Below, piece after piece: positions 5,966 to 25,879 of a stretch of 64,000 nt of DNA (within the stretch, counting starts at the first letter, position 1; each line of letters starts with the position of its first letter). A program made the position numbers and the translations under genes. Origin of the DNA: Octopus sinensis. Its lineage: Eukaryota. The stretch covers positions 51,770,001 through 51,834,000 of the forward strand of contig NC_043006.1 of assembly GCF_006345805.1 (NCBI RefSeq), read 5' to 3'. Below the pieces are notes generated by a model that was not told the origin of the DNA, searched no databases, and saw only the letters and a program-made list of their open reading frames with translations.

Positions 5966-6138
5966 TTAGAGTGCATTATTCAGATTAAATACAGTGTTAA
6001 CGAAAGTTGCTAGAGGTTCCATTGATCTGTGAGGAATTCGAGATGTTGACTTGTCAGAACCATGGTACGGTTTATATACAACAACAGCCATGGCTATGAA
6101 CAGAACTATTAAGGTAACGCATATTCCACATGTTAGAC
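5966..6138 (-). CDS. Terminal coding exon of a single-pass membrane protein (TM helix plus short cytoplasmic tail)
   Basis: Strong acceptor TTTTTTCTCTTTTCAG|, phase 1. Translates to (G)LTCGICVTLIVLFIAMAVVVYKPYHGSDKSTSRIPHRSMEPLATFVNTVFNLNNAL*, with a ~21-aa hydrophobic segment. Confidence 0.75.
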
Positions 6139-6200
6139 CTGAAAAGAGAAAAAATAGAAATTTTGAGAAAGAGAATATGAGAAAACAAAGGTAGAAAAAG

Positions 6201-6231
<31 letters not shown>

Positions 6232-6861
6232 GAGAGTGATAAAGGGAAGAGAGAAGGGGTTTACTGTAAATTTCTGATTATAATGGGTAAAAGGTAGTAG
6301 GAGCTGGAAAAGTTGTTACGGTGGTTTTCAAAGCCACCCCTTATCAAATACAGATGACTATTCAATTGGTAGACTGACTCTCTCGTTGATATAATGATCA
6401 GACACTACTACGACTACTACCATGCTGCGACTGCCACCACTAGCATACTATTTCTTCCACTATTACGAACCAGTCCTTAATATCAACATCGCCACTAAGG
6501 TACAATAAATTATTTTCTGTGTTAAAATAGTTACTGCAATTATGACTCAGAAAGCATTAAAAGGAGACCAACAACCACTGCCATTTGAACAGTCTAAGAA
6601 AAACTTGTAAACTTTTAATATTGCTATCATGCAAGTTTAATTTAATTAAATTCAATTTATTTTCCTTACTATATGAGTACATTGTCTTAAACAATTAAAA
6701 CCGGTTATATATTTCGATAAAAATATAAATATTTCTCCTTTTATTTACCATTCTCAAAGCCGTTTTTCCTTTTGTTTTCGTGTGAAACTTAAATTTCTCA
6801 ATGTACATACATACGTACATATGTACATACATACATGCATACATATATATGTATATTTATA

Positions 6862-6896
<35 letters not shown>

Positions 6897-7089
6897 CATG
6901 TGTGTGTATATGTGTGTGTGCGTGTGTGTGTACATTTGTGTGTGTGTGCGTGCGTATATGTCGACCATGGCTAGAAGACCAAAGAAATATTTCAGAGACC
7001 AGCTAAGGATCACTTTAAAGAGAAGTGACATCAGCCATTCAAGAGAGTAAATATTGCTACCAACCATTCATTCATTCTGTTAGTTTCAC

Positions 7090-8260
7090 TTTAAGAGGAT
7101 AACAGAAGATATATATAGGAGAAACGAACTCGCCTCTATTATGTTCAGCAAAGTAATGTGGCATGAGCACAAAATTATATTGTCTCTCACCATAGATTTA
7201 CTTGTCCCATCTTTGACTGTAGCTGTCCACTAAAGATTGGTATGTACCGCCATCAACTGATCCACAAATAAAGAAGATCGTTATCATAGCATTCGATCGA
7301 CAACCATAAGCATGTCAATATATTGAGAGATCTCTATATGTATTCTCTTTCCCTTTCTATTTTCCTATCGTCAGTTCGTTTCATCCCTCTTTAGAGTTCA
7401 TCGACTCTATTGCTTATCTTGCAGTCACTCACTCTTGACATATTCTGTCAGCTTCTTCTGATCGCTCCTATCTCGACCTACGTCCTCCCACTGACTCACA
7501 CCCCATCCACAATCTTTCAATTCCACCACATCTGCCACCCTCGTTGCTGTGGAAAGTCTCGTTTATATAGACTATAAGCAGAAGCCGTCCCTAAGGAACA
7601 CCACTGGTGATTTTACTGGGGTTGAGTGGATTTCACCGATCACAATATGTTGTGTTCTGCTCTCCAGGAAATACTCAATCCAGTGTAGTAGTTTTCCACC
7701 GATTCCAAAATTTGACAATTTTGTCAGTAGGATATTGTGGTCGACTCTGTTGAACGCTTTACTCATGTCAAGATATATGACATCAGAGTTCGGACCTGAT
7801 TCCAAGGCTTTAAGAACATCATGGATGTTGTGTAAGAGCTGTGTTAGATAGTCCCTGCCGCAGCGAAAACCATGCTGGTTTGAATTTAGGAGATCGTTGC
7901 TCTCCAGGAAGCCACCTATCCTTGATCGTACCACCCTTTCAAACATTTTAATGATATGGGATGTGAGTGAGATTGGGTGATAGTTGACTGCGAGGGATCT
8001 GTTTCCCTGTTTGGGAAAAGAGCTGTTTCGGTATATATCATGAGTCTAAAGAATTTCTCCAGAGGTTGGTTAGAAGGGCTGCAAGTTGGTATCTACATTC
8101 TTTCAGACTAACAGGGAAGCTATCAGGGCCTACAGTAGAATAGTATTTGATCTCATTTATTGCTGCTATGATATCTGAAGCAGTATAAAAGTTATATCCG
8201 AGATTATATGTTGAAGATCGACTTCGTTCACATCCCTTACGTCAATATCAGTGGGATCAT
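7090..8260 (-). mobile_element. CR1/L2-like LINE reverse transcriptase fragment
   Basis: NY.PISLTS..IKMFERVV..NQHGFR..YLDMSKAFNRVDH (ORF 7572-7946), followed by a frameshifted GVP.G motif; degraded flanks. Confidence 0.85.
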
Positions 8261-8267
8261 TAAAGGC

Positions 8268-8322
<55 letters not shown>

Positions 8323-8331
8323 ATACGCACA

Positions 8332-8362
<31 letters not shown>

Positions 8363-8387
8363 CACAACACACACACGTAGATATATA

Positions 8388-8645
8388 TTCTTTTATTTCT
8401 TTTACTTGTTTCAGTCATTTGAGTGCAGTCATGATGGAGCACCGCCTTAAAGGGTTATAGTCGAAGAAATCGACCCAAGGACACCAAGACTTATTCTTTG
8501 TAAGCCTGGTACTTATTCTATCGGTCTTTTTTGTCGAACTGGTAAATTACGGGGACATAAACACGGCAACATCGGTTGTCAAGCGATGGCGGACATCGGT
8601 TGTCAAGCGATGGCGGGTGGGGTGGGGAATGAGGACAAACATAGA
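8388..8645 (-). mobile_element. SINE family B (OR/CORE-like), 3' half
   Basis: Reverse complement of the 3' half of the full copy at 40279-40785; contains a 24-bp tandem duplication at ~8570-8615. Confidence 0.85.
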
Positions 8646-22960: not shown

Positions 22961-23059
22961 CTGTGATATGTGCATGGTATTAGTTATCGTAGCACTGCAT
23001 CCTTCAAACATTCCATGCTTCCTGAGATTCGCCAACACTACACCTGATTTTTTCCCCCT

Positions 23060-23241
23060 CTGTACACATGCAAGCATGTATCTGACTCATACACTGTTCA
23101 CTTTCTAGACATTTGTACATTACTGCATATGCTTTATACGCACTTTTGACAAGTTGTGGTGCATCTGAGCACTGTATACAATAAATTCATTATTATTATT
23201 ATTATTATTATTATATTATTATTATTATTTTATTATTATTA

Positions 23242-23290
<49 letters not shown>
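23060..23290 (+). mobile_element. Probable LINE 3' end with an (ATT)n tail
   Basis: Unique segment ending CACTGTATACAATAAATTC directly followed by ~100 bp of (ATT)n. Confidence 0.4.
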
Positions 23291-24513
23291 GTTTGAGGAT
23301 GTTTTGTTTGTTTGTATTTGTCTATATATGTGAGCTTGCTTGGTCTGGGAATCCCACTTCAAACAGTACTAAAAACAATAGCCGAACGTCAATAAAATCA
23401 TATTCTACCGTCTTAAATAAAGAAAGATGCTTTAGACAATATAATTCTTGATGACAAGATTGTTACGGCAGTTATGCCTTTACTTATACGTCTGCTGGAT
23501 CAGAGAAGACCCAAGTTTAAACAACAATAACTCAAATCACAAATATATTTTTACAGATATATTATAGTCATTATTATTGATGGATTAAATAAAAAAATTA
23601 ACATCATTCGACATATAGATATCTTTATTTTTAAATAAAAAACCTTTATCATACATTAGTTTCACATAAAAATATTATTTCACTGGTACTTACTTTCATC
23701 GTCAATACAGCAAAGTGAATTAAGGAGATATTGAAAAACTTCTACTTTGTGCTACAGGTATCGAATTAAATATATTTATTCTGTTCACCTCTGATCTATA
23801 GAGTGGGCAAGGAAATAAGACGTTGTGGTTCATATGCTTTGAAGGATACATTAGCAACCCAACTGAAGTGAAATTACTTCAACTAAGATTAGGAATCGGG
23901 AGAAGGATTCGGGTCGCCAAGACACAAGCTATCACCAGTATATTTAACCCAATACTGAAAGAGAAAATCCCAAATTCGGTATTCTTGATAAAACTAGAAA
24001 TAGTTTGAAAAAATATTTCTAAGGATCTGATATCTGGCAAAGTTTGAATGTAACACAGGAAGTTTTTCTATGACCACAGTCCGCGATTCAATTTCGTTAG
24101 AGTCATTTTCTGGCCACAATTTATATTTCATCATGAAGACTGATATCAGAAAAGCTAAGGCGACTTACATTTCCTTTGAAATACTATAAGAAAAATATTG
24201 CTTTGAGTAGAATGATTATCTTTCTTACTATATTTGACTATCACAACATATCTTTGAGTTATTGTCATTGTTGTCTGAATGAATATACTCTGATGATCAA
24301 CATTACTGACAGAAGATATTTACTGTTGCTTTCAAATGTGCAGCAGTTTCTGTAGAAATATTCAGTCGTATCACACTAATGATTGCTTTGATAGTATGGA
24401 ACAGTGTGATCTTATGCGCAAAGTTCTTCTGATGCTTCATGATATGCGTTGCTGTTTATGAGGGATGTACTAGCAAGGAAAGAGATAGTAAACGAAATAA
24501 GAGGTATTCTTAC

Positions 24514-24648
24514 CTCCAGCTTCTCACAAAAGACCACAAGACCCAGCAGTGGAGGATTTTCAACGCGTTCAATGTAGCCTGAACAACATGGTTCAGAACA
24601 GAACACAGCTTTTCTCATTCTTTTTACACCTTTCATACAGCACAGCAA
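24514..24648 (-). CDS. Internal Cys-rich coding exon (phase 0->0)
   Basis: GTATTTACAG| acceptor and GAG|GTAAGA donor; 135 nt with only one open frame, LLCCMKGVKRMRKAVFCSEPCCSGYIERVENPPLLGLVVFCEKLE. Phase matches the upstream exon. Confidence 0.62.
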
Positions 24649-24770
24649 CTGTAAATACATGCAATAGGTAGACATTTGAAATATGAACACCAATGATATA
24701 TGAATTTATGAATTTCACATCATTTCACAATTCATTTATCGGTTTGTCTTATTGTCTGGCAGTCTTTATG

Positions 24771-24804
<34 letters not shown>

Positions 24805-24926
24805 TGTATGTATGTATGTATGTATGTATGTATGTATGTATGTATGTATATGTGCATGTATGTATGTGTGTGTGTATCATATGTATATTTCTATACTATA
24901 TATACATATACATGCACGTACACACA

Positions 24927-24978
<52 letters not shown>

Positions 24979-25568
24979 GCATTAACATACATAAATTTGA
25001 AAATACCGCGCGTAAGTCATAAGATGCAGAAAAAATAACGAAAGAAAGTGTACAATTCCATTGCTATAGTAATTTAATAAAACAAAATGCTTTATTACAT
25101 ACCGGTTTCACTTCTTATGTGAGATAATCATTGAGCCATCTACGTGTGAAGTGAAATTTGTAAGTAATAATGTATTCTGGAATTTACAATAATATGTTTT
25201 GAAATACTTTGATTATAACAACGTATTTTGGAATAATTATATGTTCATTGTATACCTGTTTTCACCTTATATAATACTCATATGTTTGACGTTTGTCTTA
25301 TATGTTTAAGCTTCATGATTGTCTCCGTCTTATTCAAAAACCAACCTTATGGATATTGCTATCGTATCATCATTCATTTTTATGTGATCGGATTTATTAT
25401 ATGTATATTAATCGTATTATTCATCGGTACATTTGGTAAGGATCGACGAGACGTTATAAAATAGCTAATAGTTAGATACAAGTAACAGAATATATATATA
25501 TATATAGTATGTGATGTTACTAGTGAATGTGATAATAACAGTGCAAGGAGGAGTCACCAGACACTTAC

Positions 25569-25634
25569 CTGATCATCTGCTGCAGTCATCGTGATCAACA
25601 ATATAACGAAACATAATATTCTCCAAGACTTCAT
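25569..25634 (-). CDS. Start-codon exon encoding a signal peptide (exon spans 25569-25656)
   Basis: MKSWRILCFVILLITMTAADDQ; consensus CAG|GTAAGT donor (phase 0); acceptor TTTTGTTTTATATTCAG| at 25657. Confidence 0.72.
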
Positions 25635-25879
25635 GTTTCTTGCTTCTCTTAACTCTCTGAATATAAAACAAAAACAGAAATATGTTTGAAAGCGCGCGCG
25701 CACACATACACACACACACGCACACATTCATACGCACGCACACACATATACACACACCAATGTGTGTGCGTATGTGAGTGCATGCGTGGATCTGATGAGT
25801 GTACCAACACATATGCATACACACACGTATATAATGTATGTATGTCATTGTTCGGTTTTATTTCAAGATTTCTTGCCAA

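What the first reader, a model, noticed from the sequence alone, without database searches (positions are those of the whole stretch)
5966..25656. Hidden four-exon gene whose splice phases join only through an in-frame TGA: candidate stop-recoding switch between secreted and membrane-bound forms
Seen in sequence: four minus-strand exons with canonical splice sites and phases 0, 0->0, 0->1, 1. They join into MKSWRILCFVILLITMTAADDQ-LLCCMKG...CCSGY...FCEKLE-PSDSFKFRIDGEWRGKPRYCA[TGA]WEN-GLTCGICVTLIVLFIAMAVVVY...NAL*. The TGA (15334-15332) is 10 nt before a GTAAGT donor. Read as stop, it gives an 88-aa secreted Cys-rich precursor; decoded, it gives a 149-aa single-pass protein. Established: coleoids recode mRNA extensively by A-to-I editing, UGA->UGI reads as Trp, and a stop <50 nt from the last junction usually escapes EJC-dependent NMD. 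Inference: editing or readthrough may control membrane anchoring. Sec insertion is an alternative, since it would add an 8th partner to 7 extracellular Cys. Caveats: a 5' G neighbour is disfavoured by ADAR; the exon's other frame (phase 2->0) is open and would fit if exons were missed; pseudogenisation or assembly error are also possible.
Basis: partly seen in the sequence, partly recalled or inferred. Interest (0 to 1): 0.8.

Follow-up and report, generated by a model that had tools for sequence, protein, structure and literature searches.

The report
Annotated octopus secreted-peptide gene; stop unproven as switch
The four exons and the in-frame TGA are real, but the gene is already annotated in two octopus species as a small secreted cysteine-rich protein ending at that TGA, and nothing testable here supports editing, selenocysteine or programmed readthrough, although the membrane-helix-like reading frame after the stop is odd enough to deserve a look in RNA data.

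Summary
Observation confirmed. The four minus-strand exons, splice sites, phases and the TGA at 15334-15332 are exactly as described.

The gene is not hidden. O. vulgaris carries three annotated isoforms, of 88, 72 and 102 aa, and O. bimaculoides has an 88-aa model. The 88-aa products end at this stop. The O. vulgaris genome (about 98% identical to the window) has all four exons identical, TGA included.

Exon 2 encodes a six-cysteine domain shared with about 50 uncharacterised secreted proteins of crustaceans, chelicerates and copepods. None of the genome-annotated members has a membrane anchor.

All three annotated isoforms stop in exon 3 or at the second codon of exon 4, so exon 4 is essentially 3'UTR. 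They differ by exon 3 inclusion, an acceptor 18 nt upstream, or exon 3 skipping.

Tests of recoding were negative:
- no SECIS element;
- no unusual RNA structure;
- a G 5' of the A that would be edited;
- UGA-U rather than a known leaky context.

One oddity remains. The 60 post-stop codons are open across the junction and encode a convincing membrane helix, which is hard to get by chance.

Best reading: an ordinary conserved stop (about 0.68). Recoding is not excluded (about 0.2).

The parts
34949..35002 (-). 5' exon 0a. Only its 3' part is mapped. It carries an upstream in-frame ATG (MENCRYAKSLLRKLEEN[D/Y]) used as the start in O. vulgaris isoform CAI9727920.1, followed by the donor GTAAAC.
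   Evidence: The peptide of P0002 maps here. The window differs from O. vulgaris by one non-synonymous change (D->Y).
33377..33402 (-). 5' exon 0b, 26 nt (ELFSYILS + CA), with flanks ag| and |GTAAGT.
25569..25656 (-). Exon 1: acceptor tattcag|, 22 nt of leader, ATG at 25634, signal peptide MKSWRILCFVILLITMTAA, then DDQ, donor CAG|GTAAGT.
   Evidence: It is 100% identical in O. vulgaris. The family consensus 'ADD' follows the signal peptide.
24514..24648 (-). Exon 2: the whole conserved six-Cys domain (CC-x12-C-x3-CC-x18-C), phase 0 to 0.
   Evidence: AF2 pLDDT is above 90 over residues 31-60. A homologous exon in an unrelated eukaryotic contig appears to have the same boundaries (reading of P0016 against the hit coordinates).
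15322..15397 (-). Exon 3, 76 nt, phase 0 to 1. It encodes the tail PSDSFKFRIDGEWRGKPRYCA, then the stop, then WEN and G-. An alternative acceptor lies 18 nt upstream (exon start 15415) and gives PSLPL-TAG.
   Evidence: P0003 88 aa; P0004 72 aa. The AF2 tail has low confidence, about 50.
15332..15334 (-). In-frame TGA: the stop codon of the 88-aa isoform, 10 nt upstream of the ACG|GTAAGT donor. Its context is UGA-UGG.
   Evidence: identical in O. vulgaris; the O. bimaculoides model ends after the same Ala.
5966..6138 (-). Exon 4, first part. Read in phase 0 (exon 3 skipped) it gives V-TAA. Read in phase 1 it is open for 57 codons (GLTCGICVTLIVLFIAMAVVVY KPYHGSDK...NAL-TAA), which looks like a TM helix followed by a basic tail.
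   Evidence: (the CDS of P0002 ends 6 nt into this exon).
5870..5965 (-). The rest of terminal exon 4, 3'UTR in every reading, with the first AATAAA at 5893-5888. The exact 3' end is not mapped.
   Evidence: No SECIS was found.

Best explanation
This is an already annotated, transcript-supported gene of the Octopus vulgaris species complex. It encodes a small secreted protein with a signal peptide, a 39-residue six-cysteine domain and a short variable tail. The TGA at 15334-15332 is its ordinary termination codon.

Alternative splicing around exon 3 gives three short C-termini:
- exon 3 included: a 21-residue tail ending ...RYCA, with a seventh, unpaired Cys;
- an acceptor 18 nt upstream: PSLPL;
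- exon 3 skipped: V.

In all three, translation ends in exon 3 or at the second codon of exon 4, so exon 4 is almost entirely 3'UTR. The stop lies 10 nt before the last junction, so the message need not be a target of nonsense-mediated decay.

The transmembrane-like frame that continues through exon 4 is not translated. It is either a coincidence of a locally T-rich exon or the remnant of an older membrane-anchored form that was truncated before O. bimaculoides and O. vulgaris diverged.

Shown: the exons, the stop and its conservation, the isoforms, the family and its lack of anchors. Inferred: that exon 3 is spliced to exon 4, that the tail is not translated, and the remnant-versus-chance origin.
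For: - The 88-aa product is identical to O. vulgaris CAI9727921.1. O. bimaculoides A0A0L8HSE8 is 88 aa, 95% identical and ends at the same residue.
- Two further O. vulgaris isoforms (72 and 102 aa) also end early. They map to the alternative acceptor at 15415 and to a direct exon 2 to exon 4 join.
- Alternative forms in that annotation came from PASA updates using Iso-Seq and RNA-seq.
- All four exons, including the TGA, are identical between the window and O. vulgaris, against 1.8% divergence over the whole gene.
- About 50 homologues share only the exon 2 domain. All named members are short 'uncharacterized' proteins of arthropods with hydrophilic tails. Their best 19-residue Kyte-Doolittle score is about 1.0 or less, against 2.82 for the read-through tail.
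- No SECIS was found.
- RNA structure does not exceed shuffles.
- There is no polyadenylation signal for 1.6 kb after exon 3, and the first one lies 72 nt after the exon 4 TAA.
Against: - The frame after the TGA stays open for 60 codons across the splice junction, in exactly the phase exon 3 hands over.
- It encodes a 21-residue hydrophobic helix followed by K/R/H-rich sequence, as in a type I membrane protein.
- Shuffles of exon 4 are open in 2.9% of cases, and open with an equally hydrophobic 19-mer in 1 of 100,000.
- Only one other non-repetitive ORF among 401 in the window is as hydrophobic.
- A relic kept open since before the O. bimaculoides split would need some luck (my rough estimate is 15-40%).
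- No RNA reads, ribosome footprints or peptides could be examined.
Confidence: 0.68

Rival explanations
1. Translational readthrough of the UGA. A fraction of ribosomes inserts an amino acid (Trp, Arg or Cys by near-cognate tRNA) and continues into exon 4. This would make a 149-aa type I membrane-anchored isoform beside the secreted 88-aa form.
For: - UGA is the leakiest stop codon (established knowledge).
- The extension is open, in phase across the junction and strongly TM-like, which chance explains poorly.
- The stop is conserved rather than mutated to a sense codon or followed by decay in the two genomes seen.
- The stop sits 10 nt from the last junction, so the mRNA should be stable.
Against: - The context is UGA-U-GG, not UGA-C or UGA-CUAG.
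- No stable structure is predicted downstream in the spliced mRNA (z +1.87).
- No genome-annotated family member has an anchor.
- The window and O. vulgaris have no substitutions in the extension, and local divergence is only 0.65%, so there is no evolutionary signature either way.
Confidence: 0.12
2. A-to-I editing of UGA to UGI (read as Trp) by ADAR removes the stop in some transcripts or tissues.
For: - Coleoids edit coding sequence massively. Stop-loss editing (UAG->UGG) is frequent enough that editome pipelines handle it explicitly.
- Those pipelines keep only ORFs similar to Swiss-Prot proteins. This gene had no Pfam match or named relative in the searches run here, so they would probably have skipped it, and its absence from the catalogues means nothing.
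- The same open TM-like extension applies as for readthrough.
Against:
- Neither 676 nt of pre-mRNA around exon 3 (z +0.15) nor the 572-nt spliced mRNA (z +1.87) folds better than shuffles. No long duplex covers the site.
Confidence: 0.05
3. A rare splice form bypasses the stop. It could use a cryptic donor inside exon 3 (ACT|GTGCAT at 15339, which would join ...PRYC to LTCGICV... in frame), or an unannotated exon could replace exon 3. Either would give a membrane form without any recoding.
For: - The cryptic donor at 15339 is in the right phase and even recreates the Cys codon.
- Exon 3 is already alternatively spliced at its acceptor and by skipping.
Against: - The cryptic donor scores 0.2 bits on a generic donor matrix, against 10.6 for the donor actually used. 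That is the median for any GT in the window.
- A crude scan found no other open phase 0->1 exon with strong sites between exons 2 and 4.
- No such isoform is among the three annotated from long and short reads.
Confidence: 0.06
4. The UGA encodes selenocysteine, giving an eighth redox-active partner to the seven Cys.
For: There is an in-frame UGA directly after a Cys-Ala, and the number of extracellular Cys is odd.
Against: - No SECIS was found at gathering score in 64 kb, and none at E<=10 in 3500-6200 or 14300-15700.
- The 104-nt 3'UTR folds no better than shuffles and not into a SECIS shape.
- The six family Cys already form a closed set, and the seventh is not conserved outside octopus.
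- No homologue has Cys or Sec alignable to this position.
Confidence: 0.01
5. The locus is a decaying pseudogene or a non-coding transcript, and the stop is one of its lesions.
For: Only two protein clusters from octopus exist in the database searched, with no entry from other cephalopod annotations.
Against: - There is a single stop only, placed after the complete conserved domain.
- All six invariant Cys, G29, G46 and the signal peptide are intact.
- There are no substitutions in 201 nt of exons 1-2 CDS, where about 4 are expected from the flanks.
- All splice sites are strong.
- Transcripts are annotated.
Confidence: 0.03

Closest known systems
Unnamed six-cysteine secreted protein family ('uncharacterized protein LOC...' of decapods, Limulus, Centruroides, Tigriopus, Artemia, Lepeophtheirus)
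   Same: A signal peptide ending in ..ADD, then CCMxG(W)K-x7-C-x-(A)PCC-x-GY-x16-C. All six Cys, two Gly and the spacing are invariant. Phmmer E-values run down to 1e-12, and profile E-values to 1e-27.
   Different: The octopus tail (exon 3) is not alignable to any other member and carries a seventh Cys. Only the octopus gene has an in-frame TM-like continuation after its stop. The family has no Pfam model, no literature hit and no significant PDB fold match.
Stop-loss A-to-I editing in coleoid cephalopods (UAG->UGG, STOP->W)
   Same: The outcome proposed is the same: an edited stop read as Trp, extending the ORF. The clade is right.
   Different: The documented class cited there is UAG, where the edited A follows U. 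Here the A follows G, and no duplex is predicted. No RNA evidence is available.
Programmed stop-codon readthrough giving C-terminally extended isoforms (for example Drosophila readthrough genes; mammalian AQP4ex, LDHBx and L-MPZ, from my own knowledge)
   Same: A UGA stop followed by a long in-frame extension that would change localisation.
   Different: There is no leaky +4 context, no downstream structure and no evolutionary signature yet measurable. The extension crosses a splice junction 10 nt after the stop.
Eukaryotic selenoprotein genes (UGA plus a 3'UTR SECIS)
   Same: An in-frame UGA next to Cys in a secreted Cys-rich protein.
   Different: No SECIS at any threshold tried.
Secreted versus membrane-bound isoforms made by alternative 3' exon use (for example immunoglobulin mu chains, from my own knowledge)
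   Same: The terminal exon holds a TM-like segment, and upstream splice choices decide the C-terminus.
   Different: None of the three annotated splice forms reaches the TM frame.

Membership tests
Six-Cys secreted protein family (unnamed; arthropods and octopus) | N-terminal signal peptide followed by the pattern CC-x12-C-x3-CC-x18-C with conserved G, K, P and Y | tested here: met
   C25, C26, G29, C39, C43, C44, G46 and C63 are invariant in 35 and in 52 sequences.
Six-Cys secreted protein family (unnamed; arthropods and octopus) | A short soluble product with no membrane anchor after the domain | tested here: met
   The annotated 88, 72 and 102 aa products have none. Named relatives score about 1.0 or less on a 19-residue Kyte-Doolittle window. 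The feature would fail only if the TGA is decoded.
Selenoprotein gene | In-frame UGA within the ORF | tested here: met
Selenoprotein gene | SECIS element in the 3'UTR | tested here: not met
   Rfam found no hit at gathering score in the whole window and none at E<=10 in 3500-6200 or 14300-15700. The 3'UTR fold has z = -0.12.
Selenoprotein gene | Homologues with Cys or Sec at the aligned position | tested here: not met
   The tail after the domain is not alignable, and no conserved Cys occurs there.
ADAR stop-loss recoding site | The edited A lies in a favourable neighbour context (5' U, A or C, not G) | tested here: not met
   The sequence is U-G-A, so the 5' neighbour is G. The neighbour preference comes from established knowledge.
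ADAR stop-loss recoding site | The site is embedded in a stable RNA duplex | tested here: not met
   Fold z-scores are +0.15 for the pre-mRNA and +1.87 for the mRNA. This is in silico only; a distant editing-complementary sequence is not excluded.
ADAR stop-loss recoding site | An A>G mismatch between RNA and genomic DNA at the site | not testable with these tools
   No read data are available.
Programmed translational readthrough | A leaky stop context (UGA followed by C, or by CUAG) | tested here: not met
   The stop is UGA, but it is followed by UGG GAA.
Programmed translational readthrough | A long in-frame extension with protein-like properties | tested here: met
   There are 60 sense codons, a TM-like helix and a basic tail.
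Programmed translational readthrough | Purifying selection on the extension across species | tested here: inconclusive
   There are 0 differences in 173 nt against O. vulgaris, but only about 1.1 are expected from the local 0.65% divergence. O. bimaculoides DNA could not be reached.

The most novel reading that the evidence does not exclude
The conserved UGA is decoded in a fraction of messages, by near-cognate readthrough or less likely by A-to-I editing. One octopus gene would then make both a secreted six-Cys protein and a type I membrane-anchored version of it, with the choice made 10 nt before the last exon junction. This would be a lineage-specific gain, because arthropod relatives of the family have no anchor.
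Probability: 0.17. Interest if true: 0.6.

Novelty: already known. Interest (0 to 1): 0.3.

Why it matters
As it stands, this is an annotated small secreted-protein gene with an ordinary stop codon. Two modest points of value remain.

First, the exon 2 domain defines a conserved six-cysteine family shared by octopus and many arthropods. It has no Pfam model, no solved fold match and no literature hit, and the model here is confident over the domain.

Second, the TM-like frame after the stop is statistically odd. Published cephalopod editome pipelines, which keep only Swiss-Prot-like ORFs, would probably have skipped this gene. It is therefore a cheap and well-defined test case for stop-loss recoding or readthrough in a coleoid. 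One look at existing Iso-Seq and RNA-seq data, plus a comparison with other octopod genomes, would settle it.

If the stop were decoded, it would be a new example of a known kind of mechanism rather than a new mechanism.

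Tried and rejected
- **Full 149-aa read-through protein in the exhaustive representative search:** I searched with the O. bimaculoides 88-aa protein instead.
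- **Orthologous O. bimaculoides DNA:** The exact-product look-ups of P0001, P0003 and P0004 found nothing. No neighbouring gene lies within 10 kb in the O. vulgaris locus. The decisive cross-species test of the extension could therefore not be run.
- **Paralogous exons in the window:** a tblastn of each exon peptide against the window found nothing beyond the exons themselves.
- **Pfam:** no family for the protein or for 35 relatives. The weak MARVEL hit to the TM tail (E 0.07, 13.6 bits against a cutoff of 32.8) is dismissed.
- **Literature:** a search for the family's motif strings gave no papers.
- **Foldseek against the PDB:** nothing significant. The best matches were tachystatin A and a spider toxin at E about 1, so I make no fold assignment.
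- **Closest non-octopus relative (L002, an unknown eukaryote in an ENA assembly):** it has two tandem domain exons but no recognisable exon 3 or exon 4 homologue and no nucleotide similarity to the window. It is uninformative about the tail.
- **My first folding script:** it timed out and was replaced by the fold tool.
- **Liscovitch-Brauer 2017:** the id I tried was not held in the library. The statement on ADAR neighbour preference rests on general knowledge.
- **Splice-site matrix:** the donor matrix uses generic consensus frequencies set from memory. Its scores are only a rough ranking.

Full report
**1. The observation**

- 25634-25569: ATG...CAG|GTAAGT
- 24648-24514: ...acag|TTGCTG...CTGGAG|GTAAGA
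- 15397-15322: ...ttgtag|CCATCG...AAAACG|GTAAGT
- 6138-5966: ...tttcag|GTCTAAC...CTCTAA

Exon 3 is open in one other frame. Exon 4 is open only in the frame that exon 3 hands over.

**2. The gene is not hidden**

A protein search found two octopus clusters. Their members are as follows:
- O. vulgaris CAI9727921.1: 88 aa, identical to exons 1-3 of the window, ending ...PRYCA at the TGA.
- O. vulgaris CAI9727922.1: 72 aa, ending ...EKLE-PSLPL.
- O. vulgaris CAI9727920.1: 102 aa, with an N-terminal extension and ending ...EKLE-V.
- O. bimaculoides A0A0L8HSE8: 88 aa, 95% identical, ending at the same Ala.

PSLPL-stop is what one reads from an acceptor 18 nt upstream of exon 3 (aaaag|CCTTCCCTTCCATTGTAG). 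'V-stop' is exon 2 joined directly to exon 4 (GTC TAA). The CDS range of that gene in the O. vulgaris chromosome ends 6 nt into exon 4.

The N-terminal extension maps to two further 5' exons, at 35002-34949 and 33402-33377.

In that annotation, alternative forms were added by PASA from Iso-Seq and RNA-seq assemblies. Exon 3 inclusion, its alternative acceptor, exon 3 skipping and the exon 4 acceptor therefore have transcript support in a sister genome.

The junction from exon 3 to exon 4 is not directly shown by protein records. There is, however, no AATAAA or ATTAAA for 1.6 kb after the exon 3 donor, and the first AATAAA comes 72 nt after the exon 4 TAA. I therefore infer that exon-3-containing messages also end in exon 4.

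**3. Conservation of the stop**

The O. vulgaris locus (OX597822.1, L001) aligns to the window at about 98% identity with several kilobase-scale indels. The window therefore comes from a very close relative or another haplotype of the O. vulgaris complex; O. sinensis is my guess.

All four exons are 100% identical, TGA included. The O. bimaculoides model stops after the same residue. This rules out assembly error and a private nonsense mutation, and dates the stop to before the O. bimaculoides / O. vulgaris split.

It does not discriminate between a true stop and a recoded stop. The identity of exon 4 is not informative either. Local flank divergence is 0.65%, so only about 1.1 differences are expected in 173 nt. 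For exons 1-2, about 4 were expected and 0 were seen.

**4. What the protein is**

An exhaustive phmmer search with the O. bimaculoides protein found 48 proteins at E<=0.001. All match over residues ~22-67, which is exon 2.

The alignment shows a signal peptide ending in ..ADD, then CC-x12-C-x3-CC-x18-C, with all six Cys and two Gly invariant. Named members are 'uncharacterized' proteins of decapods, a mantis shrimp, isopod, amphipod, krill, Artemia, Limulus, a scorpion and copepods. The rest come from marine metagenomes.

There is no Pfam family, no literature hit for the motif and no significant PDB fold match. AlphaFold2 with the 52-sequence alignment models the domain confidently, with pLDDT above 90 for residues 31-60 and three short strands. 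The exon 3 tail has low confidence, about 50.

Tails after the domain are short, variable and hydrophilic. Named members from annotated genomes reach at most about 1.0 on a 19-residue Kyte-Doolittle window, against 2.82 for the octopus read-through tail. The few higher values are unnamed, apparently prokaryote-style calls on metagenome or unnamed contigs (P0021, P0029, P0034, P0078), which I take (unchecked) to run into repeats.

A secreted, unanchored product is therefore the family norm. The seventh Cys (C87) is specific to octopus.

**5. Tests of the proposed recoding mechanisms**

*Selenocysteine.* Rfam finds nothing at gathering score in 64 kb. No SECIS appears even at E<=10 in the 2.7 kb containing exon 4 and its downstream sequence, or in 1.4 kb around exon 3. 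The 104-nt 3'UTR folds no better than shuffles, and its AUGA is not in a SECIS-like arrangement.

*Editing.* The A has a 5' G, the least favoured ADAR neighbour by general knowledge. The pre-mRNA around exon 3 (676 nt, z +0.15) and the spliced mRNA (572 nt, z +1.87) show no excess structure.

Stop-loss editing is real in coleoids, but the class named in the pipeline description is UAG->UGG. Those pipelines keep only ORFs with Swiss-Prot similarity. With no Pfam match or named relative in the searches here, this gene would probably never have been examined, so its absence from catalogues is not evidence.

*Readthrough.* The stop is UGA, but it is followed by UGG GAA, not C or CUAG.

*Alternative splicing past the stop.* A cryptic in-phase donor, ACT|GTGCAT at 15339, would join ...PRYC to LTCGICV. 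It scores 0.2 on a generic matrix, against 10.6 for the used donor. A crude scan finds no other strong open phase 0->1 exon between exons 2 and 4. There are no paralogous exons in the window.

**6. What remains odd**

The post-stop frame is open for 60 codons across a junction. It encodes LTCGICVTLIVLFIAMAVVVY followed by KPYHGSDKSTSRIPHR, which has the layout of a type I anchor.

The figures against chance are these:
- In this repeat-rich window, 8-9% of random positions have 60 or more open codons. Base composition alone gives 1.4%.
- Shuffles of exon 4 are open 2.9% of the time.
- Shuffles that are open and as hydrophobic occur once in 100,000. That shuffle removes local T-richness, so it overstates the case.
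- Empirically, 29 of 401 long ORFs in the window reach the same hydropathy. All but two, exon 4 included, are (TG)n-type repeats.

Because the exon and its phase are fixed by independent annotation, chance is an uncomfortable explanation, roughly 1e-4 to 1e-3. The priors for a preserved relic or for functional recoding are similarly small.

I therefore hold the ordinary-stop reading at about 0.68, covering the untranslated tail whether it is a relic or a coincidence. Decoding of the stop by any route gets about 0.17, a cryptic splice route about 0.06, and a decaying or non-coding locus about 0.03. These estimates are rough and leave a little unassigned.

**7. Comparison with what is known, and verdict**

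The gene belongs to an unnamed six-Cys secreted family; that membership was tested and met. As a candidate it resembles coleoid stop-loss editing sites and readthrough genes in outcome only. The defining features that could be tested were not met: neighbour base, duplex, leaky context and SECIS. Those that would decide the matter could not be tested: an RNA-DNA difference, ribosome footprints, and selection on the extension.

The finding is a correct piece of sequence reading and an already annotated gene. Its recoding hypothesis is unsupported but cheap to test.

Noticed in passing
window 35002-34949 and 33402-33377 (minus strand): Two short 5' exons carry an upstream ATG that is in frame with the main ORF (MENCRYAKSLLRKLEEN[D/Y]-ELFSYILSQ-ELREARN-MKSW...). 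The 102-aa O. vulgaris isoform is annotated from it, which would bury the signal peptide 34 residues inside the protein. The window differs from O. vulgaris by a non-synonymous D->Y here. It looks more like a 5' leader or a longest-ORF annotation choice than real coding sequence.
   Followed up: partly
window 57883-61461 (minus strand): An uninterrupted 1192-codon ORF encodes a very acidic, Asp/Asn/Glu/Ser/Thr-rich low-complexity protein. It lies upstream of the gene on the same strand and is probably a large exon of a neighbouring gene.
   Followed up: no
window 45268-45708 (minus strand): A 146-aa ORF (…WCWRRLLRIPWTARLTNGEVLNRI…) looks, from memory, like the C-terminal part of a non-LTR retrotransposon reverse transcriptase. 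It was not searched.
   Followed up: no
L001 14619-16977 and 42059-44724, against window ~30145 and ~6865-6894: O. vulgaris carries about 2.4 kb and about 2.7 kb of extra sequence relative to the window inside the gene's introns. The second block lies about 0.75 kb upstream of the exon 4 acceptor. L001 21647-22111 matches window 42396-42860 in inverted orientation, a dispersed repeat just after exon 1. These are presumably transposon insertions or deletions between close relatives.
   Followed up: no
window 3796-3862 and 15085-15180: Microsatellite-like stretches give sub-threshold Rfam hits to the mir-297, mir-466 and mir-3149 families (at most 37 bits, against gathering scores of 75-100). 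They are low-complexity artefacts, not miRNA genes.
   Followed up: partly
L002 10061-10198 and 10720-10851; protein P0005: A contig of an unknown eukaryote (ENA assembly ERZ25072384) holds two tandem copies of the six-Cys domain exon about 520 nt apart; the first, read via P0016, appears to share the boundaries of octopus exon 2. A 1936-aa metagenomic protein (P0005) matches the domain in 11 stretches. The domain therefore also occurs in tandem arrays.
   Followed up: partly
window 15398-15415 (minus strand): The alternative acceptor 18 nt upstream of exon 3 reads straight into the TAG that forms the normal acceptor (CCT TCC CTT CCA TTG TAG). The stop of this form lies more than 50 nt upstream of the last junction, so on the vertebrate rule that isoform, unlike the other two, would be a target of nonsense-mediated decay.
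   Followed up: no
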